From Obrimoposthia wandeli (taxonomy: Eukaryota), in assembly GCA_977020255.1 (NCBI GenBank), contig CDROCS010000162.1, positions 248,001-312,000 on the forward strand: a stretch of 64,000 nt of DNA. The letters run 5' to 3'. Positions 370-58,114 of this stretch are shown one piece after another. Position numbers and translations under genes: made by a program. The number at the start of each line of letters is the position of its first letter. The stretch's first letter is position 1. Below the pieces are notes generated by a model, which saw only the letters and a program-made list of their open reading frames with translations, made no database searches and was not told where the DNA came from.

Positions 370-371
370 AT

Positions 372-32400: not shown

Positions 32401-35400
32401 TTGAATCATCGAATTGCCAGTCTTCTCCTAACGCAAAATTTAAATTTCAAGAGTTTATACAAACATGGAGAGAACTTTACAACCAATTATTTTTGAATAA
32501 ATAACTACAATAATTTTGAATCATGTTTATGTTATACGCTATTTGAGCATATATCAGCAACCAATGAAGTATATATTTCTGTTATGTATAATGTTCAATT
32601 TATGAAGAATCTGCCCTGATTTGTTCATAATTATGTTTATTTAATTTTGTTCAATTTGTGGAAGATTGTACAATAATGAGTTGAAAGGCTAATCTAGAAG
32701 TAACAATATCATTCTTAAACAGTTTCATTATTTGTATTCTTATTTTTTAATAGATAACAGTTTTGTTAATTTAAGAATATTATATTCAGTTTCTTATTAA
32801 GAAAAAATCCATGATTTTTATTTAATATTGTTGATGTAGCTTTTAACAATATAATAACTTTAAAGAAATTTGTAAACCAAGAATAATAACTTTAGCTATT
32901 TATCCATTTAATTTATGATATCTGTTAAGCTTCCTGATTTCTATTTCATCAATAATGTTGTTTAATTTTTTATCAAATGTTCTTTCTTCAATTATGAGAT
33001 TGTCGGCTGGGTGTCATCAACATAAACTTGATATTGAATTCAAAAATTTTTGAATGTATTCTTAATCGAAATTATACATATAAAAACCAAAATTGTAACT
33101 AAAATTGAGCCTTAGAATATTTTTAAACTTCAATTATGGAAAACTCATAATAAGCTTTAACTATCTGTTGTTAGGATTTAAAAAGCTTCCAAACATTTAC
33201 AAATTTATTTATTTGAATCCAGCATTTCTGTCTACAGCAGAATACAGCAGTTTCAGATACTGTACAGGACAATTTCCTAGAGCTATCTTACACAATATGT
33301 AATTGAAAACATTTAGTGATGCTGTTTCCATAGAATGTTAAGAGCGAGTTGACGACTAATATTCTAGAAAAATAATGTAATATTCTAAATAGAACAATAA
33401 AACGAAAAGTAAGATCATTCACAATAACGTTTACCAGAAAGTAAGATTTCGAACAATTAGAATTATTCTTTAATGTCGGGCAAAGTATTGCTCATATTTG
33501 ACTCTTTGGAATTAATCTAGATAATAAAATTATTGGGCAATAATTTTTCAATTAAATGTATTATAGTATATAAAGTATTTTGGTATTTAACAAATAAGTT
33601 GAAAGTAGATAAATTTCATACACCATTGACTTAATTTGAACCATAACTTAAATAATTTCTTTCGACGTCAGTTTCTTTAACTCAAAGTACATTTTATTCC
33701 AAGGGTCAAATTCTTATAAAGGGGTTCTAATTTTCAATTGATATTATTTTCTAAATCGACTTTTTGTAAAAGATTATTATAAATATATTTGTAATTACTT
33801 TAATACATGCAATAACTTAATCAGCAATAAAATAATGCAGAGCAGATATAGGTGACTGTGACGTTTGCTAGCATTATTTGGTAACACCAGGCTTAAAATT
33901 CATCAATTTATAACAAGCCATTTTCATTTGAGTTGATGGTGAATTCGACGTATATTCATATAAACCATCATTTGACATTAGTTCACATACATAATAGGTT
34001 GAGTAACTGCCACTGATAACTTCAGGAGTACTGGATTCTTCTGTCAAAGGTTCAGCATCAGTAATATAACTATCATGTTCGGGAACTTCGTGTTCAGAAA
34101 ATTCTTCGTTAGAGAACATTTTAATATAAATATTTAAACAAATTATGCATTTTTAATCGAAATATAAACATATGAATATACATTCTTCGTTAAAATCATT
34201 AAAATACTTTAAAAATAATTTTTGCTTTAATATTTGGTATAAGTGAACTGAAATGCGGTTAGGTTATTTTTTAAAACGTGTAATTACTAAAATGTATACA
34301 CCATATATCAGATATATCCAGGTGAATATCCAAAGAATCATCATGAAATACAAGAAGAATAAGTAGAACTTCATTTCGGGTAACTTAGAACCACAAAGGG
34401 GTATTAATGTCGAGAAACAGTGAAACAGATTCAAATAAAAACAACAATGAAACGAAAATTGTAAAAAGAAACTAAAATGTAAATGTATCGAAAAGTTGAA
34501 GAAATTAAAGAGAAATTTGTATGACAAAAATAGAACTTATGAGATGTGTATCTACAAAACGTCATTTTAAAAACAGACTATAATTAGAATATAAAATTCA
34601 GATGACCAACACTGACTTGTTTCGCAGGGTTTTGGGGTTTGCTGGGGTTGCTCACCTGAATGATTATTTTTGTCAAATGTAAGAAAAAAATAGTGACAAG
34701 TAACTTAACCCGATTATCAAAATCATTCATTTGGCTATTTAAGGGTATCACATTATGGATGGACAAACAAAGTACTTGGAAGTGAATAAATTATTTAGTT
34801 TTCAGCCCATTCCGACCATATCAATTTTTATGTTTTTGTGGTAGCCAGCTCTAGGGAGAGCTTCAGTTTCCCTCCGTGACAAACCAAACCCATCTTTGAT
34901 GTACAACTAGCCTGGGAATAGGTGAGTGAGTGTTGACGATGATGAATTAAGGTGAGACCAGTCACACAGTCTGGTTGTGTATATGACTGGGTGGCGGGCC
35001 TTAACATAATATATGATTAATTTAAAAAAAAATTATTTCATATACAATAAATATGACCATGACAAACGATGAAGAAAGGTTTTCAGACAAACTAAGCAAA
35101 GTATAGGGAGACAAGATCAATTTGTTTAGAAATTTTGAAAATATAATCCAATACAAAAGAAATGTTGAAGAATTATCAAAATTGACAGCATACTTTTTCA
35201 AATACTCCATAAAAGACAAAGTAAAAAAAAATTAGAGGTTCAAGATAACTGAATTTATCTTGAAGATAAATGTTTCGAGAATTCTACGCTACTGGATAAA
35301 TAATATAAATAAATCATATTTATAGTAATAAAAATTAACGTAAATAAACATTAAAAGAAAAGATTAAAAGTTGTGAATTAAATACTAAAATTAGGGGTTA

Positions 35401-38400
35401 AATTAAGAAATATTGTGTCCTTTAATTAGGCCAAATAGGTGTATAAAGCGATATTGTTGAGTAAGGAAGTGTGAACAATACGAAGAAGGGATAAACAGAA
35501 GATGAAACAGACGAGACAGATCGACTAACATAAGTGGAAAGCCCTCAGAAAGATCAAAAACAGCCAAGAGTATACTAATACGAGCAAATACTCTCAGAAA
35601 CAAAGCAGCTGTTCGCACACACCACACTGAGACCTTTTGGACATAACGATCGATCACACAACAAATCCAAGGGTTGAGAGACGGCCAACAATAAGCAGCT
35701 GATCAGAGAAACGAAATTATAATTAGGAAAATGAAAGTTTTACAATAATTAAAAAACATAAGACTTTCATTTCAGGAGACAGAGGCCAGAAGAACTGGAA
35801 ACAAGAACGACAGCCAAGGAATTCATACCGAAACTAAGCCGAGTCTCGTTAGGATCGAGAAGAACATCACAAAAACTTGGAATCGACAGCCAATGCCAGA
35901 CAGCAGCAACTAACGCCAGCGTATCGTAATACCGATAATTTGAAGTTGATAAAAGGAATTGAATATAAATTGAATCCTTAAAATTAATGTAAGAGCCTAT
36001 CCCCCGTGACATAAAGTAGTTAGAAATCAGCTGTTCATATGCAACTTAATGGGAGTTGATTAGTTTACTGTAAGCTGTTTATTGTTTTATCTGTTCATTG
36101 TTTAATTGTTTTTCTACATTGCGTATCTAATAAACTGTCAAATCAACAAGGTTTGCCTTCATTTAAGACCCTGAAAGTTAGTGCACTTAAAATACTTGTA
36201 GAAATGTCATAAAAGTGATCCATACTGTTTGACGGGAAGGTCAACTCTAAGTAGAGTCGTCCTACTTATAAACTGCCATTTCGTGGACTAGGCTTAGACA
36301 AACTATTTTTGAATTTAACCAACCTTTGGCCTAACCGGTTGTTGTTTACAAACCCACACTACACAATATTAGTTTTGGGGAAATTTCAGAAAATTGTACA
36401 CAGACAATTATGTACCACAAAAACACAGTCAGAAAGATATTTTAATCCAGCCGTAAGCCCAATCATTGCAAGATCCATGTTGGGGCCTCCATACGAGAAT
36501 TCGGAACAAGAGTTTTAGAAAACCCAACATATGATAGGCTTGGTCTGACCTAGGTCAGACCTTTAAGGATTGACCTAAAATGGTGTAAAACTTTCAAATT
36601 ATTTTTATTTCTCTACCTTTAAAAACAATTATAATGTACTTTATTTCACTTTGATTAAAGCTTCATTTTTTAATATTTTTCTACTTTACAAAACAATAAG
36701 TTAATATGTTTATTATTATTGTAAGGTAATATTTCTCCTTATATTCTAGATTTAAACCGTTTAGATTCTAATAATCAATATTTATCATGGAAAATTATCT
36801 TAATTTATCAAACTTTGTTACGTAATATTCGTATTAATTTATGTTTTATTGAATAAAGTCTTGAAATTTGCTTAATGTGTTTAAATTTAGATAAATTTAG
36901 ATATTTTTCAATGATAAGCAATGATAATTTTAAGTTAAACGGTTAAAATCTGGAGAATGTTTTTATTATAGACAAATTAACTTAAAATAATTAATAAATT
37001 ATTAACTTACTAAGAATAAGTAGATTTCAGAATAGATTGATAACATTTCAATGATTCTTTTTCACTTATATTCATTTTAAAACTTGATATCAAAAACTGT
37101 TTCTTATGAATACGATACCTACTAGTAGAGGTACTCAAAATTATTCGTCAAGCATATATATCTTAATATAAAAATTATGTTACTGTGTTGATTTAACCGA
37201 TATAATACAACAAAAATAGATATTTTATACATTTGTTTCAGTCAATGTTAAATAATTCCTATTATAATATTTTTTTTTTAAATATAAAAAAAAGCAACAA
37301 TTAATTTTATTGACACATTAGATATCTTATATTTACTATTTTTCTATTTATTCTTCATCCACATATTGGGCATATTGAAAATTTGTTTGAACAATGAGAA
37401 GGTTGACAGAGAATCACATTCGAAAATCCACCTATCCTATAAGGACCTCAAAAGTACATGTCTGCTATAGTAGATGTCAATACATGTCAAAGCAGTGGAT
37501 GTTCAACAGACGTTGAGTCATTATCCGTCATGATAAGTGATCGATCAGTCATTACGAGTCATTGATGATGTCATCGTTCCTAAAATGAAGTCATACCATA
37601 AGAGGAACAAACCCAAATATCTACCCTGGCATCGACCAAAAACCCGTAAAACGGACACACTCCAGTGAATGTCCCTAAAAATGACGTACTGGGGAAAATC
37701 TTGCGTCAAACGTCAACACCCCACGGGATATGTCTTTGTTCTCAAAGCACATCCCTCTATTTACCATAAGCAAAACACTCAGGTGACATACACTTACATG
37801 TTTCAGATGGTTTTGGAGGAGCTTCAGGTAGCTCACCTGAAAAAACACAATTATTATACGCGAAGCGTTAAAATAATTGATGCAAAAACAGATGATTAAA
37901 AGTATAAATATTGAATTCCCATTTTAAAGTAGATTGTGTGAGTGATAAAAAGTGCATTTGAATAAACTGTCAATTTTATTAAAGTTTTATTTATAAAGTA
38001 CAATAGGATACATTCATATCAGTGACGGGAAGCGGGATCACCACCACAGGCAATACCAACAGCAGTATTCCACCAAAAAGGTTATGATAACTGTTTGGGG
38101 GTCAATATAGGAAATTGTGCACTCTATCGATTTGAATGAAGGCGAAATAATTAATTCAGACTCCTGTTACAGAAGAATTGATATAATTCGTCAAAAATAT
38201 GATCAAAGCAAACCAGTAAAGATAATCGGAAAGGACCCATTTTGATCAATGACAATGCCAAATCACATCTATTGATTGGCACACTGGAGAACTTAATGAG
38301 CTTGTAGTATGAAATCCTTCTACATCCCTCATACTCACCAGATCTGGATCCATCCGATTTTCATATCTTTAAGTATTTATCATCATTTCTGGATGTGTAG

Positions 38401-41400
38401 AAATTTGATAATATACAAAGCATAAAGTCAGAGGTATGCAACTTCTTCTAGTTTAGAAATTTTAAAAAATTAAACAGTTATGAATCTCTTACGAAACGTT
38501 GAAAAATAATATAGAACAAGAAATGTATTATTTTGATTAATTATTGTTTTAATTTATTTATATAAAACCGACATGAACTATGTAACAACCTAATATGTAT
38601 TAGACAATTGTTTCAAGTAGAAATAAATCTAAATATCCTTGCAGTATTCATGTTTAGAAATTACATTTAGTTGATAATTCAACAACTGGCAGATTGTCGT
38701 ACAATGCAACAAACAATTAATGAAATATATAAGTAGTGCAAAGTGTCGGTTCGAACTTATGGACTCAAACCCTCCTGGGTCATAAGTTATAAGTTAATAG
38801 GTCAGAATAACGGCTTTTGTGTGTCATTCCCAGAAACATTTGAGCACAAAGCAACAGTAAATCTTTAATTTTTCATTTTTCCCGATATACTTTCTATGTT
38901 GATAATATTGAGTAAAAATCCAATTTTAATTCGTCTATATGATATGTATTATTTATTGAATAATCAATTTTTAAAATTTGTGAATTATAAGTTAATATTT
39001 ATAATCCATAATTATATTTAGTGATAGTTAGACTAAGTAAAAATGAAAATAAAAAAATTCAATTGCATGGGAGTTGTATAAAAACAGATTAACAAGTATT
39101 ATTACCGTTAATCGTTGAAACTGAAATAAAGCCTAAATTAAGAAAAATAATCTAGGGTGATGGATTAGAGTAAACTGTAATATTCTACTAATAGTCTACT
39201 TTAAAAATTTCATTGATATAATTTTTTATTAAATCCAATAAAATACCGAATTGAAAAATTTATTTTACAAAACACTGTGCATCATTTTGAAGTAAGTTAT
39301 TTTGTTATTGATTTTAATGTGTCGTCTACTTATATTTATGATAAAGAAAAGTTACACCATAAAGGATACGGAAAAGAAAGATGAAAAACAAAAAATAGGC
39401 TCGTGTCAAACATAGTCTTCTAAATGACCTTCGTTTTAATTATGTTATTAAACATATGATATTTGTTTTTCGATCGATGATTCAGATTTGATTTTATGAG
39501 TAAAGATAGCTTATCTTTACGTTTTAAAAGAGCATTTGACAGAGGTTCAGTTGGGATCTATTTGTTGGGACTAGACTTGCTGCACTTCTTATGAGAGCCT
39601 GTAGTTCGTGAGTTCTTGTGTAAAAGACCTTCCCTGATTATTCTCATCTCTGAAGATAAGTGAATGTAAGAACAAACATAATGAATGAACAATCTACTAT
39701 ACTACAGAAACATAAATAAAACAGGGCTATCGTCTAATTTAAAATAAAACATAATACACTTATAGGAATACAAAATTTAACAAATTGTATCAGATAAATT
39801 TGATATGGTAATCCTTCTCGATATGTAATTCTCGTTGCAATTCTCCCTTTCCTTCTTTCTTTTATCCTTTAGCTAGTTCTCTAATTCTAACTTATGTTTG
39901 ATTCATTATCCTTCCTCCAGTACTTGTGACTGCTTTCTATTGGTTGGTGTTGGCAAATTTCCTAAGATTCCAAAACTTACATCCATGTGGGCGAGGGACT
40001 AATTCAGCTCTTCTTCGTTTCTTTCAGTCTCGCTGCGAAACCCTCTCTGCTTCAGATGTCTGACTAATATACCTGTTTTTCCTTTATTGAGTAGATAAAT
40101 TATTTTAAAATACTTATTTGTCCCTTAATTTGGTCTTAGCCAATACTATAAATATAGCCACTTTATCTATTTTTTGAAACTCTAATCGTCCTTTTCTGAA
40201 CCTCAACATATGAAATAATAGGATATAATGATATTTTGAGTTAGAAAACTAGATAAGACTGTTAATTCAGAGATGTGGTTTTATTAATAAATGAAATAAT
40301 TTCAAAACTAAGACGACATTATTGAGCTTGATTTCTTCCTAAAACAATATAATGACAATGTAACATGTTCATATGCATTTGTAAGAGTTCTTGGATGACA
40401 GTATCGTAATCAATATTAAACTATAGTAGTATAAAGGTTGTTTTAATAGAATGTGTGGCTTCTAGAACGGGTCGTCATTTAAACTATCAGTAATTCGGAA
40501 ATCGATTTTGAAATATACTGCTCTAAAATGTCTGGGAATCCTTTATATGTAAACTTGAAAGCACCATTTCTCAAAGACAATTGCTTAAAAACAATTTGGA
40601 TTATTGGATTCGTGATTAGAGGGTTCGATTACTCCATAGAGGTTGTAACCTAATTCTTCAGATGATATGAACTCGGTTTAGAAAATGTGTGCTTTCGAGA
40701 AGGTCTGACTAACGATGGCACATAAACATTGAGCCTATGCATCTTCTACAGAACCAATTTAAACAAAAGTTTTTGTATTTTCATTGAGTTTACTTTAACA
40801 CAACACACTTTATGCTACCATGATTAATTTGAACTATTCTCTACTAATCATCAATCTATATAAATATTATGGGACATTTCTGACAATCTGAGGTTTGAAA
40901 AAGAAATAATTAAATATCAGAATATAATTTTTTACAAAGTCCCATTAACATCCATAATGAATAGTAGACTATTATAATTATTTCCTAATTGTTGTAAAAT
41001 ATTTAAAAACTTCAAATAATACAACTCACATATTTTAGATGGCTTTGGTGGGGCTTGAGGTTGCTCACCTATAAAAATTTTAAAATAAAAAAATCTGATA
41101 AACAATTCAAGCAATAAAGGCTTTTTTTCTAACATGATCTGTAAATCTTCAGTTTTAATAAAAATTCCAAAAGGTCCTAAAATGTTACCTTTTTAATTCC
41201 ACTTTTAAATAAAGCTGGTTTTTTAGTTATCGATAATATTATGTATGGCTAACTATAAAAAAAAATTATTTGATTTACCCATTTTTCATTTTTCTGTACC
41301 AAAATTTTAATTGACTTTTCATTTATTTCCCATAATCTTATTTAATTTTTTTTCAATTCTAAAGGTTTGAGGTGAAATTTTCAACATTTGTGAAGTGCAC

Positions 41401-47400: not shown

Positions 47401-50400
47401 TTTTCCCCATGTCTCCTCAAATATCTGGACGGGTTCCTGCAAAATATTAATAAAATTTAAACATATAAATAATTTACCTCAATGACGTGCAGGTTCACCA
47501 ACTTGGCTTTCTTCCGATGGACCGTGTGGGTTTTGACCCGATGGCGTTGCGGTTTCTTAACCGCCGCTTGCTTCCTATCCACCGGTTGAATAGGCGTCGC
47601 TTCTTCGAGAATGTTTTCCATCTATGTGAATTATTAAATTTAATATCTAAACAATTTACCTTAAAATTATCTGGAAACGCTAGGTATCGGAGCTCACTCC
47701 TTGGCAGCTCATGGCTACATTGACTCGCCAAGTACTGTGGTTCTATGAGCCTCTCCGCCATGGTCACTGACGGTGCCAAATCCAGTTGAAGTTTCTGAAA
47801 ATTAAATTAAAAATCATTTAAAATAAATTATGTCTAACCTCATTAGTCGCTTTTATTCTCCTAACAGGAGATTTTGGCCTTTTGAATGGTTCAGGCGTTG
47901 TATTATCCGCATTCGGAGTAGCAGAGAGAGTGAGACCATCCCAATCGTCGATGAACAGGTGCCACTCGTCCTCGTCCAATTCTGCCACCATCGAATCGTT
48001 GGCTCCTGGGGCTCCGATACTTGGCTGTATCCATTCGTCGATGAATGGAGTCAAGTCCTCCCATCCGACGGAGGGCGTTGGGCGGTGGGCGGTAGGCGGG
48101 AAAAACTAGGATATAGTCCGCATCCCAAGGCGCGAGCGTTGGTGGTTTGCCTTGATAGGGGCGAAAAATGTTTTTGGGGTACCCCCCTATCCTTTAAAAC
48201 CGTGCATGTGTGTGGAGTGAAATTTCACTCCACACACATGCACGGTTTTAAAGGACAGTGGGGAGAGGGGGTGTGGATTAGACCGGACACATCCACCTAC
48301 TATTAATAAATTGTATAAAAACACAAATCATATTAAACACATTTATTTAAAATATAAAATCAATTTTTTTTTCATATTTTCTTTCGTTAATGATCGTCTT
48401 TTATTAGATAGAATGTTCGGATGAGTTGAAAATGACATCTTCACTTCCACAGAAATAATGAGAGCACTTTGGAGGGCAGCTAATTCTTTTAAATGATATA
48501 ATTCTATATTGAGATCTACAAGCTTTTGAAGTCTATGATTTTTGTTTAGAACATCTTCAAGTTTTTCTAACACATCTAACTCAAACTTTATTTTCATTTC
48601 ATTATAGCGCTCAAAAAAATAGTTGGAGTAACATCCCCTCTGTCACGCAGTGTTATTAAATCTACAAGTGGAATGTACTTCGTCTTTATAGTTAATAATT
48701 CTTTCTTGTTTGCATTATTACTAAGAACATCTTGGATCTCAGCAATACTTGAAACTTTCATTACTTGATATTTCATTACAAATGAAGAAATAGCTTCTAG
48801 ATGTTCAACATAATATGACACGGCTTCTAACCACTTTCCCTATCGAGTGGCACAATGTTCAGGCGAAAGTGATATTCCTTCTTGTTGTAATTTTTGACAA
48901 CTACACTTACAACTTATAATATATAACATATAAAATGTTTTATAATTGAACCCTATTGTTTCAAAATATTTCCGTTTCAGAAGACAATATTTGTGGTAGA
49001 TGGACCTCGTTATAGCCATGGTTAAACTCGAATCACACGTGGCAGAGATTTGATGGAGGTTTTGGGTAAATCCGAAGACACAGATCAAATGACAATTCCT
49101 GTAAGCCCCACTTAATCCACTGAGGGAGCCCGCTTGAATATTCCAAGTGAGACAAGGATGTTAATTTATTTATCTATAAAGGTTATATAAAATTGAAGAA
49201 TGCAACTGAAACATCTGAAAATAAAACTTTCACAACAGTTTGACATATCTGCATTGAACTGTAAACGGTTGTAATTCGAATGAATCTAAAATGATCATTT
49301 TAAACTCACATATGAAAGAGGGTATCAATGATGATTGCGGCTGTTCGACTAAAATATTGAAAATATAATACAACATCAAATATGCAAACTTGGTAAAAGA
49401 TTTAACAAATTCATTTTATTTTTTAATCTCTTATAATTAAATTTTGCTTGAACATAAGTGAACATAAGGCATTGATTTAAAAGACAATTCTTTCTCATAC
49501 AGACACTAATTCCCTTTCTTTCAGTTATGCAATTTTTTACAAAACCTTTTCTATCCCATCATCCCGTAGACCAGATTTCATCAAAAATATTTTAAGTAGT
49601 CACTAAACTTATGATATTGGAATTATGACAAAACATCCAATAAGATGTATATTTTTGTGTATTTACAATGATATTCGTAAAAGCTATTTCGCTTATTGTC
49701 GAAGTTTAAAAATACACCACACTTCTCACACTAAGCTTGCCACAGTTTCGAAACGTTTTCCAGAACTCAGTCAATATCATAGTTCTTTATCTACAAGAAA
49801 AGGCCAATTTGCAGTTTGACCCAAACTTACCACATTTGGTTAAATTGTTGACACTCACTACGCTTTCCCTATCTGATTTCTGCACCAAATGGTTCCATAC
49901 ATATTGCAACATCAAATTGAAACTGTTACAACACGACAATATTGTTTGCAAATCATCCAATCAATTAGAAGCCTAGTTTAATACAAAGAAGAATGTGTGA
50001 TGATACCACCCCTGGTTTTGATGCGTACGTAGACGTCCATTATAATGGCATTGAGGTCGACAACACCCTTTATTTTGTTGTTCAAATTCAAAATATGATA
50101 ACATTGTATTTGGAATTTGCTTCTTTATTACACGTTGTTGCACTGAGAATTCACACCCCATTGAAGGCCATAAATAAATTTATTTAAATGCAGTATAAAT
50201 TCTTGTGTGTATTTTTTTAAAAAATTCATTACTGTATTTAAAACAATTTAGTAAATTAATTAAACCATTTGCTCTTCAAACATAAATGTATTTATATTTG
50301 AAATGTAAATATGTATTGTTTAAATTATTTTATCGAAATATTTACAGATATTTACTGCATAAATACAAACAATTTGTTATGTTATCATAAATCTAATACT

Positions 50401-53400
50401 TGCATTCAAATATTATTTAAATTTTGAATGTAAAATCATGCTAATTTGTATTCTTAAAATGCCTTTTTTAAATAAATACAACTATTTTCTTTGCATTTGA
50501 GTGTGAATACATACTAATATGTACTGTTTAATGCATTTTATCGAAGTATTTGAGAGTAAAAATGTACTGTTTTAAGAAATTTATTTTGAAATTTGAGTGT
50601 AATTACATTGCTCAAAGGAATTTATTACAGTATTTGCAGTTGATTAAAGGAGTTTATTATAAGAAGTGCTTGTAATTATTTGCTAATTAAATACAATTAT
50701 TTGTTTGTAATTATAGAATTTTTTTACTTACCATTTAAATGTATTTCAATGTAACAACATACTAAAATGCATTCTTTACGAGAATTAATGGCAACTATTT
50801 ACTAAATAATTACAATTATATTTATTAAATTTATTGAAGTAATGACAGCTATTTACTTAATAAATGCTTCTATTTGCTATGTTGTCATAAAAGTGTTTGA
50901 AATTTGAATGTAAAAACATGTTAATATTAATTTTAAAAAGCTTTTATTGAAGCAATTTACTAAATAAATAATTCTTTTTTGAGTTTAAAAACAAACTTAT
51001 AGGCTCTGTTTAAATAAAAAAAAAACATTTTGCAAATGTAATAATAAATTTATTTAAATGTAGTAGAAAATTATGTGTAAATACAATGCATAAACTGTGA
51101 TAACATATATTTGTCTCGAATTAAATGATTTTTTTGAAGTAATTGTGATTTTTTATTAAAGTAAAATCAAAGTGAAAAGAAGCTGTTTAATTTTGAACTA
51201 TATGTTCTTGAAGTATTTGAGTATTTGCGTATTTCCAATAGAAAATAAAAAATAATCTACTTACAAATAAAGTACATAAATTAAAAAAAAACTAAGTCAA
51301 ATTCATTTTGTACACTTTTTAAAGATAAACGTCATTATATGTGTGTACACATACACACTCGTTTGTATTAAAATATCTACATACGATAATTTATTGAATT
51401 AATTAGAAGTGATAAGCATGTACTAGAATATGAATAGTTTAACGAATAATAATTGGTCTTGACGTAGCATTTAGACGATACACTTTAAATTTTACAATAA
51501 ACAATTATGACTTCAAAAATGACTCCAATATAACAATTTGAAGAATTACAAAAGCTCTTGAAGCCACAACAGTTTCAATGATATGAAATGAAGTACTTTG
51601 ATGTCTACATGATTTCAGAAGTAATTTTTGAGATAATAAATATTCCATTTAGGTGATTTTTAACACCTTAACTCACACGACGTTATAGCTCCATCAATTT
51701 ATATAGAGGTAATATCTTTGAAATAAACTTTAGTTGCGTACAAATGTTTTTAATTAGTTCAGGAAAACAAATAACGTAGATTTAATAGCTATGTTATTGA
51801 TAAATTTAAATAAACATTTATTCATGTTATTTTTTCAATAAAAAAATACAACAAACACGAAACAATTCTTGCACCAAAAGAATTCTCAAATAAATAACAT
51901 TAAAAAAATTCAAAAAAATATGGAAAAATATCGAGAACAATATTTCAATTTAATAACATAATTAATATTCGGTTTCTCCCTGGGTAGAAGTCTAAAATTG
52001 AGTTTCTCACGAGCATGTCTGCAGGTAACTTCACTCCAGAACCATTTCCCTCTCAAATCGACAGAAACAAGTCAAATTCCAGCGCAAAGTCCGAGACTTG
52101 CCGGATTTGTACATTGCTCCTGAATTAAGCCTGTGTTTGGCAGACATCAAAGGAGGGGGTATGAAGTGAAATTCTAGACTTGACCCATTACACTTCTCAT
52201 TAGATTTCTGGACCTACATCTCTTTATGCTGCTGGTGCAGCATTAAATCGGAATTGTATTCTTCCGTGTCGAGTTTATCATCCTTTGCTGACCAATTCAT
52301 TAACCATACCGCTTATGTTTAAGCATTCATTGCCACATTCTGCACGAATCTCATCAAATTTTCTGACGTTGTCGTCAGATTTTAAGGTTAGTATAGCGTC
52401 ATTGAAATCTAGATTGAAACTGAGAGCTGCTTTGGCAGAAAAAGATAAGTAAGAGTAAAAATAAATTACACAAAAAACCGCGCTATGCTTCTGTAAAGAG
52501 ATATTTCCCACTTATTTTTGTAGATATTGACATATTTCCTACTTAATTTTGTAGATAAAGACATATTTTCACTTACTTTTGTAGATATTGGCATATTTCC
52601 CACTTACTTTTGTAGATATTGACATATTTCACACTTATTTTTGTAGATATTGACATATTTCTCGCTTATTTTCGTAAATAAAGACAAATTTCCCACTTAT
52701 TTTTGTAGATATAGACATATTTTTCACTTATTGCATAATTATTATAAGAAAAAACTAAGAAAACTAAATTAAAAGAACTCTTGTATGAATCGAAACCTCA
52801 ATCAATATCCTGCATTAAATCAAAAAGTTTTTAAAAAATCTGTTTAAATATCATAATGACAATTTGGTTTATTTTTGACCATTATATATAAAATCTGTAA
52901 CCTTGACAAACCAAAAGAGAAACAGACACTTTTGAATGATTTAAATAAAATAAACTGTCTTTGTATTTTAGTAAGTAAACGACAAATTATAAAAAAACAA
53001 GAAATTTATAAAATTAAAAAGTTTCTGCCTATGTAGCTTACAGTTTGCAATGAAATGTTTATATATTTTTATTTATTCTTTGATGTTTGAAAACCGCGTT
53101 AACGAAATAAAACTCACTTAATCCAGTCTCAATCATTGTTGGTCGCTCACCTAAAAAACATGTAAATAAATTCTTCAACACATTTCGAAGTCCTTGAAAA
53201 TGTTTAAATAAGACACACAATATCAAAAAAATTATAAAAATGCAATTTCTATAATAAATTCGAAATAAAATATTTAAAAAGTTTAGGACAGTAAATTTAA
53301 ATGTACATAAATTTAAGTTTTAGATTTAAACGTTTTAAAGAATTACATATTTTTCTGTCAAGGATCAAGATAATGTTTGAATCAAACTCAAAAACACAAA

Positions 53401-56400
53401 TTCATCTACGAGATATAAAACTGTCTTACATATGTCAGAGGGCTTTGGAGGCGGCGGAGGCAGCTCACCTGAAAGATACGAAGAAGTCACTTTGATCAAT
53501 TTTTTAACTAAAACGATGAACTAATAAATTTAATGTTATTTAGTAAACTATAAAAAGAGATTAACAATGATATAACAAAAAATATAAATAAACTTCAAAA
53601 TTAGAATAGTAAATTTACGAAACTTAAATTATTCTAGATTGATAAGCAGAGTGAGCAAAGGAAATCTCACATAAATCCGATTGATTCATTGTTGGTCTTT
53701 CGTCTGTAAACAAAATAAATAAATTATTTCATAAAGGATTTGAAAACTTTGAAAACATTTTGAAACTATTCTAAATTAAAAGGTGTTAAATATACCAAAA
53801 CTTATTTTTGTAAATTTATTTTTAATTACATTTCAGCTTAAGGAACCCCTGCTTTTGTCTACAGAACCCTAGGGTTCCGTGGAACCCACTTTGAGAACCC
53901 CTGCTGTATAGAAACGTATTTTTTAATACAATTCCTTAATAAAAGTTGAAACTCAAACAAAAAAGCTTTCTTTGTCTTTATTTGGAGTGGTAATGCTAAA
54001 CCGTTAATAAAATCACGTAAATCTTATAAAAATGTGTACTTCTGAATCATGCCTCATCCCATACATAAATGTAGGAGCGTATCAAAGTATTTTGCAGTTA
54101 CTACAGATTGATAGTTTTGAGTGTCTAAGTGCTTATAAAACTATCTACATAAAATTTAACGAATATTACAACTTGTATAAGTGAAGTCTCTTACAAATTT
54201 GTAAAATGAATAGAAAACCGAGTTAGTTTGAGAATTTTTGGCGAAATTAAAATATTTCTGTTTTAGACGACGTTTCCTCTGTTCATTCTTAAACACCTGA
54301 AGCGCATGAGTTACTGGAAAGTGTTCTTAAATATAATCTTGATCAGAAATAAATAGTTGTGCTAGATGGACCCCGTTATGACCTTGGTTAAACTGGAATG
54401 ACACGAGCTTGGGATTTGAAGGAGATTAGACGGGGGCTTCTGAGTGAATGATATAACACAGAGATCAAATGAAAATTCCGGTATGACCCACTAAATCCCC
54501 GGGTAGAGCTCACCTGAAACTTCCCAGTGGGATGAGGTTGTTAGTTTATTTATCTCTTGGGCTACATGCAATACAAAAATACAGCTGAAACATCAGAAAA
54601 TGGAACTTTCACAACAGTTTGTCAACTCAACATCGAAGTGTAAATTGTAGAAATTCTAATGAAACCACAAATATCATTATCAACTCACATGTGACAGAGG
54701 GTTTCAATGATGATTGAGGTCGTTCGCCTAAATATAAAAATATCATACAGCATGAGATGTGCCAGCTTGGTAAAAAGTTGAAATACCCTTAACAGTAAAT
54801 TTTATTTATATTGCTCAGGGAAAATCATCGATACGAAAGATACGAAGAAGTCACTTTGAACGAGTTTATAATTAATAAGATGAACTAATAAATTTATATT
54901 ATTCAGTAAATTATAAAAAGAGATTAACAATAAAATAACAAAAATATAAATGAGCTTCAAACTTAGACTAAGAAATTGACAAAAATGAATTATTCCTGAT
55001 TGATAAGCAGAGTGAGCAAAGAAAATCTCACATAAATCCGATTGATTCATTGTTGGTCTTTCGTCTGAAAACAAAATAAATAAATTATTTCACAAGGGAT
55101 TTGAAAACTTTGAAAATATTTTGAAACTGTTCTAAATAAAATGTGTTAAATAGGCCAAATCTTAACAGCATCGAAAATTATTTGACAGATGTTTAAATAT
55201 GGTGAGAAACATTAAATATATTATTAATCCTGATATTTTGTTTAAAGTTACAAAAATGTCTTGATTAGACAGTTATGAATGTTAACAAAATAAATTATTC
55301 CAAAAAATATTTTATTCATGCATTCTACAGCTGTTAAACAACTCGTTTTAAAATTATCGACATGTTTAACTTATTCGAATTAGGTGGTAAAAAATAAAAT
55401 TCCCATTTTCACACAAATCTCTCAGTTTAGCTCGGTGACCCGGAGCATAATCTAAGATTAACAAAATTTTAAATTCAAGATTTTTTGAGTGGCTGTATTT
55501 TTTTACTTAGCCAAAGAAACGGTTTGTAAACCAACATTATAATTGTTTTTAACTGCATTTGCAGCATTTCTCTTTGAATTCTTTTTAGAAATGGGATTTC
55601 TAAAAATTAATAAATTTAAACAGACAATTTTTTTTTAATTAAAATATTCTTATACTTATAAAATATATTTTTAACTAAATATAAACCGCAATAAATCGAA
55701 ATTGGCATAATAGGATAATCATGTACATTAAAAAGCCACCAAATCATACGATTTATGAATCCCATGAACATTTCAAAAGTCAAAAATAAATATTTAATTG
55801 AAATTTAACATATATTATTGATCAGTTCAAAAATATTTTTGGAATATTAGTTTTCTGATTATGTATATGAAGGAAATTCTTTTAAGATTGAAGCTTGACT
55901 CAGTTCGTTTTTTATAGATGACTTTGGTTATTAGATTTATCCTCATTTATATGCATAAATATGTAATATTTCTATACGGTTTAATGGATGCTATTTAGAT
56001 GATAATGAAAAAAAATACAACCTCTTTGGCCTTTGATTAAAGCTAATATGTTTTATATTTAATATTTGTTTTGATTTAATAAATGTATTGCAATTCATTT
56101 TTGTCATGTTATGATATTTCTCAAAAAACTTTAAAAGTCTAACGTACATATGTTTGTCATTCACCGCACTTAACATACATAAGAGATATAGTAATGTATT
56201 TATACAAATTTATCATCTAAAAGTTTGTTTTATAAGTCGATTCCTATACTGACGAGCTATTTCAATTCCTGTGGGTTCTAGGGTCATGTATATGTTTTTA
56301 GGTACTTAGGTCCATCCTTGGACATAGGATGTGAAATTCATACACATATGCACGAAATTTCACTCCATACACATGTACAGTTTAAAGGAACAAAGCATAC

Positions 56401-58114
56401 CTACCACCAAGGATGGATTAGACTGAACAAAATCACATACATATATTTTAAATCAAAATCTTTTACAAGTATAATTAGGTCAAAATTATTTATATTATTG
56501 AATTTATCGAAAAAATATCCATTAAGTCAATTTGATCTGGAATTTAGTGGCTAAATGTGGGTTGACCTCAATCTTTCACTATCCCATATTATTAATACAT
56601 GTTGTGAAAACGAAAAAAAATCTCATCGGTTTTTCGTGTTGGGTTTTTGTTCTATTTTGGTCATCGTGCCATTTCCTGAGCCACTTAAGAATCTTTTCCA
56701 CAAATTTCGTATTATTAATACAGTATTATAACATCAGTATCTTATTATTTCAGCTGGATATAAACTACCTAACATTGTCTACATGGTCGATATACTGGTC
56801 AGTCTGCAAAGTTGCAAAAAATCAAAATTATGTAATTCTGCTAAATATTCTTCGCTTGTCATTAAAATCAACTCGATATGAAGAGTTACTTTTTCCAGTT
56901 TTGAAGAAAATACATCCCAGTTCCTATTAAACTGTATGAATGAAATTATTGTAAGAGTTTTTCATCGGCATGAGAATAGGCCACATCGTAATAGCATTGA
57001 AATTATTTGTCAGATCATTGAATATCCTTTAAAAACAATAAAACGTTTTGAAGAATTACATATTTTATGTCAGTAACCAAAATAATGTTTGGATTAAACT
57101 CAAAAACACAAATTCATCTACGAGATATAAAACTGTCTTACTTATGTTAGAGGGCTTTGGAAGCGGCGGAGGACGCTCACCTGAAAGATACAAATAATTC
57201 ACTTTGATCGAGTTTATAACTAAAACGATGAATTAATAAATTCATATTATATTATTTAATAAATTATAAAAAGAGATTAACAATAAAATAACAAAAATAT
57301 AAATGAGCTTCAAACTTAGACTAAGAAATTGACAAAAATGAATTATTCCTGATTGATAAGCAGAGTGAGCAAAAGAAATCTCACATAAATCCGATTGATT
57401 CATTGTTGGTCTTTCGTCTGAAATCAAAATAAATAAATTCTTTAAAAAAGGATTTGTCAACTTTGAAAACATTTTGTAAACATTATGAAACTGTTCTAAG
57501 AAAACGTTTGTTAAATAGGCCAAATCTTAATAGCATTGAAACTTTTAGACAGATGTTTAAATATGGTGAGAAACATTAAATATATTATTAATCCTGATAT
57601 TTTGTGTAAAGTTAAAAAATGTCTTGATTAGACAGTTATGAATGTTAACAAAATAAATTATCCCTCTGTTCATTCTTAAACACCTGAAGCGCATGAGTTA
57701 CTGGAAAGTGTTCTTAAATATCATATTGATGGGAAATAAATAGTTGTGCTAGATGGACCTCGTTATGACCTTGGTTAAACTGGAATGACACGAGCTGGGG
57801 ATTTGATGGAGATTAGACGGGGGCTTCTGAGTGAATGATATAACACAGAGATCAAATGAAAATTCCGGTATGACCCACTAAATCCCCGGGTAGAGCTCAC
57901 CTGAAACTTCCCAGTGGGATGAGGTTGTTAGTTTATTTATCTCTTGGGCTACATGCAATACAAAAATACAGCTGAAACATCAGAAAATGGAACTTTCACA
58001 ACAGTTTGTCAACTCAACATCGAAGTGTAAATTGTAGAAATTCTAATGAAACCACAAATATCATTATCAACTCACATGTGACAGAGGGTTTCAATGATGA
58101 TTGAGGTCGTTCGC
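9085..58114 (-). CDS. Partial multi-microexon gene: 27 symmetric phase-1 exons, 957 nt, low-complexity P/Q- then S/T/N/Q-rich modular protein
   Basis: Each exon has a pyrimidine-rich YAG acceptor and a GTRAG/GTACG/GTCAG-type donor, length 27-39 nt divisible by 3, and an open frame in phase 1. No stop at any sequential junction. Paralogous exons keep length and splice sites while their flanks diverge. Start and stop exons not located. Confidence 0.82.
9317..9349 (-). CDS. Microexon, 33 nt, xDRMSHQTANT
   Basis: ttatttcag|ATGACCGC...AATACAT|gtgagt; paralogue at 12870-12902. Confidence 0.82.
9651..9686 (-). CDS. Microexon, 36 nt, xTTFNVVTYTLA
   Basis: atacacag|TCACAACA...TTGGCAT|gtaaga; no paralogue seen. 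Confidence 0.55.
10003..10038 (-). CDS. Microexon, 36 nt, xPGTIQQSMNAP
   Basis: aatttcag|GACCTGGC...GCACCAA|gtacga; paralogues at 11424, 14205 and 17660. Confidence 0.82.
10420..11280 (-). mobile_element. Gypsy pol fragment (RT and RNase H), degenerate
   Basis: PFGL...VYLDEILVYS...LKFLGHTI...LRSFIG in ORF 10878-11246; downstream RNase H-like FSAVYEFIMHFKQY and DGLS. Confidence 0.85.
11424..11450 (-). CDS. Microexon, 27 nt, xPGTIQQSM (9-nt in-frame deletion variant of 10003-10038)
   Basis: aatttcag|GACCTGGC...TCAATGA|gtacga, inside a ~210-bp direct repeat (11292-11509 vs 9873-10082). Confidence 0.75.
   Translation of the reverse strand, partial: DLAPFNSQ
12628..12660 (-). CDS. Microexon, 33 nt, xNTNTYKTGNS
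   Basis: ttattccag|ACAACACC...AATTCCA|gtgagt. Confidence 0.82.
12870..12902 (-). CDS. Microexon, 33 nt, xDRMTFQTANT
   Basis: ttatttcag|GTGATCGC...AATACAT|gtgagt. Confidence 0.82.
13239..14020 (-). mobile_element. hAT-superfamily (hATm-like) DNA transposon 3' remnant
   Basis: Terminus TAGGCCGGGTCG at 13239; ORF 13662-13958 carries PCHSQVVEHAVNLVTRAS...SRKKLPIF, resembling the hATm transposase C-terminal motif PCHTQAVERxVKLVTEAS (subfamily from recall). Confidence 0.65.
14205..14240 (-). CDS. Microexon, 36 nt, xADNNEQSTNTP
   Basis: ttatttcag|GAGCCGAC...ACACCGA|gtacgt; diverged paralogue of 10003-10038. Confidence 0.8.
14886..14918 (-). pseudogene. Dead microexon, 33 nt, xITNTFQFRKY, donor GT>GA
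   Basis: tttttcag|ATATTACC...AAATATA|gagagt; positional and peptide paralogue of 9085 and 12628. Confidence 0.6.
17097..17530 (+). mobile_element. Tc1/mariner transposase 3' fragment
   Basis: WPPRSPDLNLMDFYFRGYLKYEVY motif; TIR-like GAGACACCTTATA near 17520. Confidence 0.75.
17660..17695 (-). CDS. Microexon, 36 nt, xTGKTQQSMNTV
   Basis: catttcag|GAACTGGT...ACAGTGG|gtacga; most diverged member of the QQSMN family. Confidence 0.8.
18279..20674 (+). mobile_element. Internally deleted piggyBac element
   Basis: TTAA on both sides (18275-78, 20675-78). TIRs CCCATTCTATACCA / TGGTATTTAATGGG. Subterminal GTCCTATWWTAGGAC palindromes. C-terminal Cys-rich domain RCQ...CKPKTYCVKCKKTLCKFCFPKYH (~18835-18935). 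Confidence 0.8.
19030..20340 (+). mobile_element. hAT-superfamily (hATm-like) remnant nested in the piggyBac
   Basis: QRKKGRRGCMGSVD, LDRNKISDRQATFVLAATAQSLGHD, NDNAER...EQQKQFLLQVVQDNR; terminus GGACCACCCTA at 20340; left end not found. Confidence 0.7.
21250..22400 (-). mobile_element. Possible Penelope-like (GIY-YIG) remnant
   Basis: Weak: RYVGHAERERL at ~21640-21680 resembles the GIY-YIG YVG motif; coding-like but heavily broken. Confidence 0.3.
23615..23653 (-). CDS. Microexon, 39 nt, xNEFQSMNSINTA
   Basis: ttttttaaccag|GGAACGAA...ACAGCAA|gtaagt; shares QSMN with the 36-nt family. Confidence 0.78.
23955..24720 (+). mobile_element. Highly decayed Tc1/mariner element
   Basis: TAAGGTGTGTTCAG terminus-like sequence at ~23957; YDLNPFDSFY*GFMKS at ~24490-24540 resembles SPDLNPLDFFLWGYLKS. 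Confidence 0.45.
25141..25173 (-). CDS. Microexon, 33 nt, xNSRVQKGLNS
   Basis: caatttcag|ACAATAGC...AACTCAA|gtacgt. Confidence 0.72.
27967..27993 (-). CDS. Microexon, 27 nt, xCFSLISNS
   Basis: ttaattttcag|CGTGTTTT...AACTCAA|gtaagt; same AACTCAA end as 25141. Confidence 0.65.
29938..29970 (-). CDS. Microexon, 33 nt, xPQQSRRSTRN
   Basis: ttatttgtag|CACCCCAA...CGAAATA|gtgagt. Confidence 0.72.
31106..31144 (-). CDS. Microexon, 39 nt, xQRLEDDFQSRFI
   Basis: gacctttatag|ATCAAAGA...TTCATTG|gtaaga. Confidence 0.68.
34617..34655 (-). CDS. Microexon, 39 nt, xEQPQQTPKPCET
   Basis: atcattcag|GTGAGCAA...GAAACAA|gtcagt. Confidence 0.8.
34780..36011 (-). mobile_element. Cluster of LTR-like fragments / possible solo LTR
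   Basis: Minus-strand starts TGTCACGGGG (36011), TGTTAAGGCCC (~35005) and TGTCACGGAG (~34880); no TSD or internal domain confirmed. Confidence 0.3.
37798..37836 (-). CDS. Microexon, 39 nt, xELPEAPPKPSET
   Basis: ttttttcag|GTGAGCTA...GAAACAT|gtaagt. Confidence 0.84.
38020..38593 (+). mobile_element. mariner transposase C-terminal remnant with 3' TIR
   Basis: Decayed KKVMITVW, NDNAKSH, HPSYSPDLDPSDFHIF motifs; ends AACAACCTAATA, typical of a mariner TIR. Confidence 0.8.
41030..41068 (-). CDS. Microexon, 39 nt, xEQPQAPPKPSKI
   Basis: tttttatag|GTGAGCAA...AAAATAT|gtgagt. Confidence 0.84.
42754..42786 (-). pseudogene. Dead microexon, 33 nt, xERPTMNQTEL, donor lost
   Basis: ttatttcag|CTGAACGT...GAATTAT|gatagt; peptide paralogue of ERPTMNQSDL exons. 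Confidence 0.65.
43363..43401 (-). CDS. Microexon, 39 nt, xEPLPPPAKPSDI
   Basis: atctttcag|GTGAGCCT...GACATAT|gtgaga. Confidence 0.84.
45023..46682 (-). pseudogene. polB: Protein-primed family B DNA polymerase, N-terminally truncated and frameshifted
   Basis: DIYLLADVFE, GIHGGM, YIDINNLYGWAL, YKLKSNSIFGK, GDTDS, GKFKDE, FLRPKCYS, AKGV across ORFs 45930-46682, 45163-45888 and 45023-45211. Confidence 0.9.
47305..48054 (-). CDS. Spliced Polinton gene of unknown function (4 exons, 208 aa; may originally have been longer)
   Basis: Exons 48054-47839 (72 codons), 47794-47660 (45), 47621-47478 (48), 47436-47305 (43 + stop), joined by AT-rich GT-AG phase-0 introns of 44, 38 and 41 nt. Confidence 0.7.
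48190..48255. repeat. Perfect 66-bp palindrome in right subterminal region of Polinton
   Basis: TCCTTTAAAACCGTGCATGTGTGTGGAGTGAAA followed directly by its exact reverse complement. Confidence 0.95.
48340..48900 (-). mobile_element. hAT transposase C-terminal remnant
   Basis: LSPEHCATR*GKWLEAVSYY and ALIISVEVKMSFSTHPNILSNKRRSLT resemble hAT TRWGTW and dimerisation-domain motifs. Confidence 0.7.
49310..49348 (-). CDS. Microexon, 39 nt, xEQPQSSLIPSFI
   Basis: atattttag|TCGAACAG...TTCATAT|gtgagt; diverged paralogue of 54689 and 58076. Confidence 0.8.
51980..52420 (-). mobile_element. Possible PIF1/Helitron helicase fragment
   Basis: Weak: FLSI*EGNGSGVKLPADML...FYP resembles the Helitron LLxIGxG...LP...YP region; next to a 31-bp tandem array. 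Confidence 0.25.
52499..52730. repeat. 31-bp minisatellite, about 7.5 copies
   Basis: Consensus GACATATTTCCCACTTATTTTTGTAGATATT. Confidence 0.92.
53118..53150 (-). CDS. Microexon, 33 nt, xERPTMIETGL
   Basis: ttttttag|GTGAGCGA...GGATTAA|gtgagt. Confidence 0.82.
53430..53468 (-). CDS. Microexon, 39 nt, xELPPPPPKPSDI
   Basis: atctttcag|GTGAGCTG...GACATAT|gtaaga. Confidence 0.85.
53671..53703 (-). CDS. Microexon, 33 nt, xERPTMNQSDL
   Basis: ttgtttacag|ACGAAAGA...GATTTAT|gtgaga. Confidence 0.84.
54276..54831 (+). repeat. 556-bp near-identical segmental duplicate of 57663-58218
   Basis: Same length and only a few substitutions by eye; contains one microexon; diverged third copy at ~48990-49420. 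Confidence 0.92.
54689..54727 (-). CDS. Microexon, 39 nt, xERPQSSLKPSVT
   Basis: tatatttag|GCGAACGA...GTCACAT|gtgagt. Confidence 0.82.
55032..55064 (-). CDS. Microexon, 33 nt, xERPTMNQSDL
   Basis: ttgttttcag|ACGAAAGA...GATTTAT|gtgaga. Confidence 0.82.
56320..56430. mobile_element. Orphan diverged fragment of the Polinton terminal repeat
   Basis: GAAATTTCACTCCATACACATGTACAGTTTAAAGGA...GGATTAGAC matches 48219-48285. Confidence 0.6.
57142..57180 (-). CDS. Microexon, 39 nt, xERPPPLPKPSNI
   Basis: atctttcag|GTGAGCGT...AACATAA|gtaaga. Confidence 0.85.
   Translation of the reverse strand: MSVLRRFQSPLT
57385..57417 (-). CDS. Microexon, 33 nt, xERPTMNQSDL
   Basis: ttgatttcag|ACGAAAGA...GATTTAT|gtgaga. 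Confidence 0.82.
58076..58114 (-). CDS. Microexon, 39 nt, xERPQSSLKPSVT
   Basis: tatatttag|GCGAACGA...GTCACAT|gtgagt; identical to 54689-54727. Confidence 0.82.

What the first reader, a model, noticed from the sequence alone, without database searches (positions are those of the whole stretch)
34617..57180. Seven microexons start with GTGAG: recursive-splice (AG|GTGAG) architecture
Seen: exons ending at 57180, 53468, 53150, 43401, 41068, 37836 and 34655 all begin YAG|GTGAGC. After ligation the junction recreates almost the same donor the upstream exon just used (e.g. exon 53671 native TTTAT|gtgaga versus spliced TTTAT|GTGAGC). Established: YAG|GURAG sites define recursive splicing and RS-exons in Drosophila and vertebrates, where the exon-junction complex suppresses re-splicing. 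Inference: a built-in include-or-resplice switch for each module could generate isoform diversity. The motif may also record intron origin by duplication of AG/GT proto-splice sites.
Basis: partly seen in the sequence, partly recalled or inferred. Interest (0 to 1): 0.78.

Follow-up and report, generated by a model that had tools for sequence, protein, structure and literature searches.

The report
Microexon array with donor-like exon starts
Seven tiny exons of a repeat-protein gene in a flatworm-type genome do begin with a splice-donor look-alike, but the motif is mostly inherited by exon duplication and spells Cys-Glu, and whether it drives re-splicing could not be tested because no RNA data were found.

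Summary
On the minus strand YAG|GTGAGC occurs 9 times, against 0.16 expected. Seven of these are the named 39- or 33-nt exons. Two are one recently duplicated intronic site.

The exons belong to a family of 14 paralogous phase 1-1 microexons encoding x-Glu-x-Pro modules. The split codon T|GT is Cys. Seven members start GTGAGC. Seven start GCGAAC, TCGAAC, ACGAAA or CTGAAC. GCGAAC also encodes Cys-Glu without resembling a donor.

Three of the seven are recent copies with alignable introns, so there are about five old lineages, not seven independent cases.

After ligation the junction (TAT|GTGAGC) pairs with U1 as well as the gene's own GTGAGA/GTAAGA donors (-4.4 kcal/mol). Before splicing, cag|GTGAGC is the strongest U1 match in the array (-9.5 to -11.1). 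The architecture therefore qualifies as RS-exon-like, with the Ubx mI/mII microexons as the closest known case.

Evidence that the motif is selected beyond coding is weak (p about 0.03-0.1). The upstream introns are short. The proto-splice-site origin idea fails, because the mRNA junctions are not AG|GT.

No RNA run was found, so function is untested. This is an interesting candidate, not a demonstrated switch.

The parts
57142..57180 (-). 39-nt phase 1-1 microexon, family A, head GTGAGC, peptide ERPPPLPKPSNI, donor GTAAGA
   Evidence: In-frame 3-nt deletion variant at 57162 in DNA contigs. Own donor dG -4.5 versus regenerated donor -4.4.
53430..53468 (-). 39-nt microexon, family A, head GTGAGC, peptide ELPPPPPKPSDI
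   Evidence: Recent copy of 57180, with flanks 86-89% identical.
53118..53150 (-). 33-nt microexon, family C body (ERPTMIETGL) but head GTGAGC
   Evidence: Its relatives 57417, 55064 and 53703 start ACGAAA, and 42786 starts CTGAAC.
43363..43401 (-). 39-nt microexon, family A, head GTGAGC, peptide EPLPPPAKPSDI
   Evidence: A unit of about 150 nt is alignable to 57180 and 53468.
41030..41068 (-). 39-nt microexon, family A, head GTGAGC, peptide EQPQAPPKPSKI; old lineage with no flank similarity
37798..37836 (-). 39-nt microexon, family A, head GTGAGC, peptide ELPEAPPKPSET; own donor GTAAGT is the strongest in the array
34617..34655 (-). 39-nt microexon, family A, head GTGAGC, peptide EQPQQTPKPCET; weak donor GTCAGT, so the 3' end is uncertain
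58076..58114 (-). Family B microexon, head GCGAAC (still Cys-Glu, not donor-like), peptide ERPQSSLKPSVT; natural control
54689..54727 (-). Family B microexon, head GCGAAC; identical recent copy of 58114
49310..49348 (-). Family B microexon, head TCGAAC, peptide EQPQSSLIPSFI
57385..57417 (-). Family C' 33-nt microexon, head ACGAAA, peptide ERPTMNQSDL
55032..55064 (-). Family C' microexon, head ACGAAA; identical copy
53671..53703 (-).
42754..42786 (-). Family C-type exon, head CTGAAC, with GATAGT where the donor should be; probable dead exon
57895..57903 (-). Intronic CAG|GTGAGC, not an exon of the family (in-frame stop)
54508..54516 (-). Duplicate of the intronic site at 57895-57903; not kept in the older paralogous intron below 49348

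Best explanation
The region is part of a minus-strand gene built from tandemly duplicated, symmetric (phase 1-1) microexons of 39 or 33 nt. Each exon encodes one module of a Pro-rich repeat, x-Glu-(Arg/Gln/Leu/Pro)-Pro... The first two exon bases complete a codon begun by the last base of the previous exon: T|GT or T|GC gives Cys, and T|AC gives Tyr. The GTGAGC head is the state of one ancestral exon, propagated by exon-plus-intron duplication, and it reads (Cys)-Glu-C.. in the protein. As a by-product these exons have the acceptor|donor juxtaposition of RS-exons. The unspliced site cag|GTGAGC is the best U1 match in the array. The ligated junction TAT|GTGAGC equals the weaker native donors. 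Inferred, not shown: the exons are normally included. The regenerated donor would be held in check as in flies and mammals, by competition from the exon's own donor and by the exon junction complex. Some in-frame skipping by re-splicing is possible but is not a demonstrated or demonstrably selected switch.
For: Motif and frame. Common descent comes from flank homology groups and local duplications. Seven homologous exons lack the motif, among them GCGAAC, which keeps Cys-Glu. C at position 6 is shared with the B heads and CTGAAC, yet no C stands at +6 in any of the 22 donors (13 family exons, 9 downstream candidates), so it reflects ancestry or coding rather than donor fitness. Real coding exons: four old A lineages with unalignable introns give pS 0.61, pN 0.23, ratio 0.38. 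The only indel seen inside an exon is 3 nt. Donor equivalence: regenerated -4.4 versus native -3.4 to -7.4 kcal/mol. Unspliced heads: -9.5 to -11.1. Known biology of RS-exons and EJC suppression: PMC8605326, PMC8184009.
Against: The two synonymous sites of the head (TGT not TGC, GAG not GAA) are invariant in all five old lineages. Among four old A lineages only 1-2 of 5 comparable synonymous sites in the exon bodies are invariant. That is a hint (p roughly 0.03-0.1) of nucleotide-level constraint. Heads are all-or-none: either 0 changes or 2-4 changes from GTGAGC, with no single-step intermediates. Exon 53150 has a family C body and flank but the family A head. For 4 of 7 exons the exon's own donor is no stronger than the regenerated one. 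By the donor-competition model this predicts some skipping. No transcript evidence exists either way.
Confidence: 0.6

Rival explanations
1. Functional re-splicing switch. After the upstream exon is joined to a GTGAGC-headed exon, the regenerated donor competes with the exon's own donor 33-39 nt downstream. Each module is then either kept or removed with the next intron. Because all exons are phase 1-1, every outcome stays in frame, and runs of such exons (43401, 41068, 37836, 34655) could be ratcheted through one after another.
For: The regenerated donor equals or beats the exon's own donor in 4 of 7 cases. All exons are symmetric. There is a hint of synonymous-site constraint on the head, and an all-or-none distribution of head states. 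Precedent: the Ubx 51-nt mI/mII microexons and donor competition (PMC8605326).
Against: No RNA evidence. The statistical hint is weak and confounded by ancestry. Position +6 is C in all heads but never in the gene's real donors. Ordinary cassette skipping would give identical mRNAs. Upstream introns are only 202-5908 nt.
Confidence: 0.2
2. The head works in the pre-mRNA, not after ligation. The very strong U1 match cag|GTGAGC recruits U1 to the 5' edge of an exon too short for normal exon definition. This helps, or throttles, recognition of the microexon and its weak donor.
For: Unspliced heads have dG -9.5 to -11.1, against -3.4 to -7.4 for all true donors of the array. The exons are 33-39 nt.
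Against: Seven sister exons of equal size, with equally weak donors, manage without such a head. No experiment or conservation data bear on it.
Confidence: 0.1
3. The array is not an expressed gene, or is a decaying one, and the motifs are relics carried by segmental duplication.
For: No RNA holder was found. The recent copies show no more conservation in exons than in flanks. One family member has a dead donor. No signal-peptide first exon was found in the window.
Against: Old lineages keep the open frame, canonical splice sites, phase and the PKPS core while their introns have lost all similarity, with pN/pS 0.38. The RNA search was made with a 9.9-kb, mostly intronic query, which can hide a small RNA.
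Confidence: 0.08

Closest known systems
Expressed recursive-splice exons (RS-exons), prototype Drosophila Ubx microexons mI/mII; mammalian EJC-suppressed RS-exons
   Same: An acceptor is directly followed by a donor-like exon start. The exon is short, with its own donor a few tens of nt downstream. The regenerated donor is comparable in strength to the competing donor. Inclusion and skipping are both in frame (PMC8605326).
   Different: No intermediates, lariats or isoforms are shown here. The upstream exons end in TAT, CAT or TAA, so the regenerated site is much weaker than the unspliced one. The introns are short to moderate. The motif occurs in a run of paralogous exons rather than at single conserved sites. 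Cross-species conservation is unknown.
Intronic ratchet points of long Drosophila and vertebrate introns
   Same: The juxtaposed polypyrimidine-YAG|GTRAG motif.
   Different: Ratchet points sit in very long introns, and their cryptic exons are out of frame and discarded. Here the exons are coding, under purifying selection, and the introns are 0.2-5.9 kb. The two purely intronic sites (57900, 54513) are not conserved in the older paralogue.
Flatworm micro-exon genes (MEGs) of schistosomes
   Same: Most of the visible coding sequence lies in very small symmetric exons. The array grows by duplication. Skipping of any exon would stay in frame (PMC4350168).
   Different: No signal-peptide exon was found in the window. 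No transcript or alternative-splicing evidence exists, and no sequence relationship was tested. MEG organisation was proposed as a gain of parasitic flatworms (PMC4398949), whereas earlier unverified notes of this scan place this genome among planarian-type flatworms.
Tandem exon-duplication arrays of repeat proteins (e.g. titin PEVK-type exon arrays; from general knowledge)
   Same: One repeat module per exon, constant phase, and growth by duplication of exon plus flanking intron.
   Different: The modules here are much shorter (11-13 residues), and half of them start with a donor mimic.

Membership tests
RS-exon (expressed recursive-splice exon) | 3' splice site immediately followed by a 5' splice-site consensus (YAG|GTRAG) | tested here: met
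   7 exons read YAG|GTGAGC. The pattern is found 9 times against 0.16 expected. Position +6 is C, which none of the gene's real donors have.
RS-exon (expressed recursive-splice exon) | Ligation to the upstream exon regenerates a usable donor that competes with the exon's own donor | tested here: met
   In silico only. Regenerated TAT/CAT|GTGAGC has U1 duplex dG -4.4 to -4.5. Own donors range from -3.4 to -7.4, and 4 of 7 are at parity or weaker.
RS-exon (expressed recursive-splice exon) | Recursive intermediates, saw-tooth coverage or lariats whose 5' end is the exon head; skipping when the EJC is lost | not testable with these tools
   No RNA run held the stretch. The only holders are DNA contigs without spliced joints.
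RS-exon (expressed recursive-splice exon) | Conservation of the acceptor|donor motif beyond coding needs | tested here: inconclusive
   Only paralogues are available. The head's 2 synonymous sites are invariant in 5 lineages, against 1-2 of 5 body synonymous sites invariant among the four old A lineages, giving p about 0.03-0.1. Sister exons use GCGAAC for the same Cys-Glu.
Intronic ratchet point | Lies in a very long intron and its cryptic exon is discarded | tested here: not met
   Upstream introns are 202, 204, 279, 1685, 3142, 3193 and 5908 nt (1685 nt counts the donor-dead exon 42786 as the upstream exon, 2294 nt if it is skipped). The exons are coding and under purifying selection.
Micro-exon gene (MEG) | Most of the coding region is made of very small symmetric exons | tested here: met
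   14 family exons of 33 or 39 nt, plus about 9 further candidate phase 1-1 exons of 27-39 nt downstream. The definition is from PMC4350168.
Micro-exon gene (MEG) | Signal peptide / secreted product | tested here: inconclusive
   No convincing ATG-signal-peptide exon ending in phase 1 lies between 58115 and 64000. It may lie outside the window.
Micro-exon gene (MEG) | Protein variants produced by differential exon use | not testable with these tools
   No RNA data.
Intron gain by duplication at an AG|GT proto-splice site | The exon-exon junction in the mRNA reads AG|GT, and the intron ends are copies of the exon ends | tested here: not met
   The junctions are TAT|GT, CAT|GT and TAA|GT. Intron starts share only GTGAG with the following exon head. 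Whole exon-plus-intron units were duplicated instead.
Mutually exclusive exon cluster | Homologous exons of equal length and phase with a mechanism that enforces the choice of one | tested here: inconclusive
   Family A exons are equal in length and phase. But they are symmetric, so multiple inclusion is in frame. Local donor hairpins are no more stable than shuffles. Long-range docking structures were not searched.

The most novel reading that the evidence does not exclude
In a free-living flatworm, a MEG-like gene uses serial re-splicing. Each GTGAGC-headed symmetric microexon is first joined and then either kept or ratcheted out, so a run of such exons yields a combinatorial, always in-frame set of repeat-protein isoforms. 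GCGAAC- and ACGAAA-headed sister exons would be fixed. This would give a mechanistic basis for micro-exon gene variability and extend Ubx-type recursive exon choice to a whole array.
Probability: 0.12. Interest if true: 0.7.

Novelty: new member of a known kind. Interest (0 to 1): 0.35.

Why it matters
Exons that start with a donor mimic are a known class: Ubx mI/mII, and thousands of EJC-protected exons in mammals. A run of seven in one array of symmetric microexons would be an unusually clean natural test bed. Sister exons encode the same Cys-Glu without the mimic and serve as built-in controls. The array could test donor competition and EJC protection, and whether flatworm micro-exon genes diversify their products by re-splicing. 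As it stands it is a well-defined hypothesis with a simple experiment attached, not a discovery.

Tried and rejected
1. RNA evidence. It returned only three runs of one sample, and these proved to be DNA contigs. The exons are about 3% of that query, so a spliced RNA could have been missed.
2. Homology searches. Single exons give 10-12 whole codons, below the minimum of the family, structure and representative searches. They are also useless under the length filter of the big protein search.
3. Proto-splice-site origin: rejected.
4. Extra intronic YAG|GTGAGC sites as ratchet points: rejected, because it is one recent duplication and is not conserved in the older paralogue.
5. A GCTCAC element 15 nt into the intron after the family C' exons could pair with the donor or with the next exon's head. 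The hairpins are no more stable than shuffles, with z about 0.
6. Exon bodies evolving faster than flanks in the recent copies: not significant, p 0.16-0.79.
7. Rfam and tRNA scans of the window: nothing.
8. First-exon / signal-peptide search upstream of 58114: nothing convincing.
9. Literature. No paper in the library links recursive splicing with micro-exon genes. The two papers that hold both 'recursive splic' and 'flatworm', two versions of one planarian single-cell RNA-sequencing methods paper, mention each once in passing.

Full report
OBSERVATION. The gene lies on the minus strand. YAGGTGAGC occurs 9 times in the 64-kb window, all on the minus strand. Dinucleotide-preserving shuffles give 0.16 expected and a maximum of 2. 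GTGAGC alone occurs 19 times against 7 expected. They have an in-frame stop. In the older paralogous intron below exon 49348 the same place reads CAA|GCGGGC. They therefore represent one recent, probably fortuitous, intronic event.

WHAT THE EXONS ARE. A scan for AG...GT intervals open in phase 1 and a motif scan give 14 homologous microexons between 58114 and 34617. All are 39 or 33 nt and all are phase 1-1. All encode x-Glu-(Arg/Gln/Leu/Pro)-Pro-type modules.
- Family A (..PPKPS..): 57180, 53468, 43401, 41068, 37836, 34655. All have the head GTGAGC.
- Family B (ERPQSSLKPSVT-like): 58114 and 54727 with head GCGAAC, and 49348 with head TCGAAC.
- Family C (ERPTM..): 57417, 55064 and 53703 have head ACGAAA. 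Exon 53150 has head GTGAGC. Exon 42786 has head CTGAAC and GATAGT in place of a donor, so it is probably dead.

Every exon ends in T or A, so the split codon is T|GT or T|GC (Cys), T|AC (Tyr), and so on. GTGAGC thus reads (Cys)-Glu plus a codon starting with C. GCGAAC encodes the same Cys-Glu without resembling a donor. Further candidate phase 1-1 microexons lie downstream (for example 12902, 12660, 9349, 9117). The introns carry transposon remains: DNA_pol_B_2 at 45.9-46.7 kb, RVT_1 at 10.9-11.2 kb, and an integrase fragment at 62.3-62.8 kb.

ARE THEY REAL CODING EXONS? No RNA evidence could be obtained. Laid on 52900-58300, these behave as short DNA contigs covering introns and exons alike, with no splice-like joints. 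My query was 9.9 kb and mostly intronic, which by the tool's own warning can hide a small RNA, so this blank is uninformative.

The sequence evidence is as follows. The old lineages 41068, 37836, 34655 and 53150 have no detectable flank similarity to any other member. They nevertheless keep length, phase, canonical splice sites and the PKPS core. Over the 11 body codons of four old family A lineages, pS is 0.61, pN is 0.23 and the ratio is 0.38. The only indel seen inside an exon in the DNA contigs is a 3-nt deletion in the CCGCCG of exon 57180. Among the recent copies, exon and flank divergence do not differ. I take the gene as real, with probability about 0.9.

INDEPENDENCE. Exons 57180, 53468 and 43401 share alignable introns. 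The seven cases are therefore about five old lineages of one exon family, not seven independent inventions.

DONOR QUALITY. The U1 5' end sequence was taken from general knowledge, and duplex energies were computed with ViennaRNA.
- Native donors: -3.4 (GTCAGT), about -4.4 (GTGAGA, GTAAGA), about -5.5 (GTGAGT) and -7.4 (GTAAGT) kcal/mol.
- Every regenerated junction (TAT or CAT|GTGAGC): -4.4 to -4.5.
- Junctions onto non-GT heads: +1.2 to -0.9.

For 57180, 53468, 43401 and 34655 the exon's own donor is no better than the regenerated one. For 53150, 41068 and 37836 it is better.

There the heads (cag or tag|GTGAGC) score -9.5 to -11.1. They are by far the strongest U1 matches of the array, because the intron's own AG supplies the -2/-1 positions that the real donors lack.

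IS THE MOTIF SELECTED BEYOND CODING? All six head positions are invariant in the seven exons, against 11 of 33 body columns in family A. But positions 1, 3 and 4 are fixed by Cys and Glu. C at position 6 is shared with GCGAAC, TCGAAC and CTGAAC, yet it occurs at +6 in none of the 22 donors examined: those of the 13 family exons with a usable donor and of 9 downstream candidate exons. It therefore marks ancestry or coding, not donor fitness.

That leaves the two wobble sites, TGT rather than TGC and GAG rather than GAA. They are invariant in five old lineages. Among four old A lineages only 1-2 of 5 comparable synonymous sites in the bodies are invariant. The rough probability is 0.03-0.1, which is suggestive but not decisive.

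Two oddities point the same way. Head states are all-or-none, with either 0 or 2-4 differences from GTGAGC and no single-step forms. Exon 53150 has a family C body and upstream flank but the family A head. Ancestry, or gene conversion from the neighbouring exon 53468, can also explain both.

COMPARISON WITH KNOWN SYSTEMS. Recursive splicing is defined by tandem acceptor-donor pairs. The prototype expressed RS-exons are the two 51-nt Ubx microexons. Mammals may have more than 6,400 expressed RS-exons. Outcome depends on donor competition, exonic elements and prior upstream splicing or the EJC (PMC8605326). The Drosophila EJC suppresses regenerated recursive sites and re-splicing of mRNA (PMC8184009).

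The present exons meet the sequence definition. They are not of the long-intron ratchet-point kind, because the upstream introns are only 202 to 5908 nt. The gene architecture resembles flatworm micro-exon genes, which are built of very small symmetric exons that allow in-frame variation (PMC4350168). That organisation was proposed as a gain of parasitic flatworms, with the caveat that it might be older (PMC4398949). Earlier AI notes of this scan call this genome a planarian-type flatworm. I did not verify this. No paper in the library links recursive splicing with micro-exon genes. The only two papers holding both 'recursive splic' and 'flatworm' are versions of a planarian single-cell RNA-sequencing methods paper with one mention of each.

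PROTO-SPLICE ORIGIN. This idea is rejected. A proto-splice site would make the mRNA junction AG|GT. Here the junctions are TAT|GT, CAT|GT and TAA|GT. The AG is intronic, and intron starts share only GTGAG with the next exon head. The array grew by duplication of exon-plus-intron units.

VERDICT. The architecture is a legitimate RS-exon candidate, and the Ubx microexons are the closest precedent. The most economical reading is inheritance of a Cys-Glu-encoding head through exon duplication, with re-splicing potential as a by-product (0.6). A selected include-or-resplice switch remains possible (about 0.2) and is cheaply testable, because sister exons with GCGAAC and ACGAAA heads are built-in controls.

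LEFT OUT. The single exons are too short for every protein tool.

Noticed in passing
window 9085-58114, minus strand: The microexon array looks like a micro-exon-gene (MEG)-type architecture in what earlier notes call a planarian-type flatworm. MEG organisation has been proposed as a gain of parasitic flatworms (PMC4398949). Further phase 1-1 candidate exons stand at 31144, 29970, 27993, 23653, 12902, 12660, 11450, 9349 and 9117.
   Followed up: partly
window 42754-42786, minus strand: A family C-type microexon (ERPTMNQTEL) with a good acceptor but GATAGT where the donor should be. It is probably a dead copy inside the array.
   Followed up: partly
window 57162 (exon 57142-57180): A 3-nt in-frame deletion variant within the CCGCCG of the exon is present in contigs of all three DNA runs, beside the reference form. 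It is either an allele or a near-identical copy elsewhere in the genome.
   Followed up: no
window 57085-57141, 53373-53429, 43306-43362, minus strand: The first ~55 nt of the intron below the three recent family A exons are nearly identical in the three copies (48 of the first 60 columns invariant). The block may be an intronic splicing element, or may simply mark the extent of the duplicated unit.
   Followed up: partly
window 53651-53656, 55012-55017, 57365-57370 (plus-strand GTGAGC = minus-strand GCTCAC): Each family C' exon is followed, 15 nt into its intron, by GCTCAC. This is the exact complement of its own donor core and of the next exon's GTGAGC head. The local hairpins are not more stable than shuffles.
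   Followed up: yes
window 45163-46682 minus; 10878-11246 minus; 62322-62771 minus: Transposon remains lie in and around the gene: DNA_pol_B_2 (Polinton-like) in the 5.9-kb intron above exon 43401, an RVT_1 fragment, and an integrase-core fragment.
   Followed up: partly
window 55796-55976 and 56339-56519: There is extremely high word depth in the DNA contigs (tens of thousands, against about 45 for single-copy pieces). These are high-copy repeats inside the 2-kb intron between exons 57180 and 55064.
   Followed up: no
window 1-4000: Strong strand asymmetry (GC skew about -0.4, AT skew +0.27 to +0.37), with low-complexity His/Thr/Lys/Asn-rich plus-strand ORFs. The nature of this stretch was not examined.
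   Followed up: no
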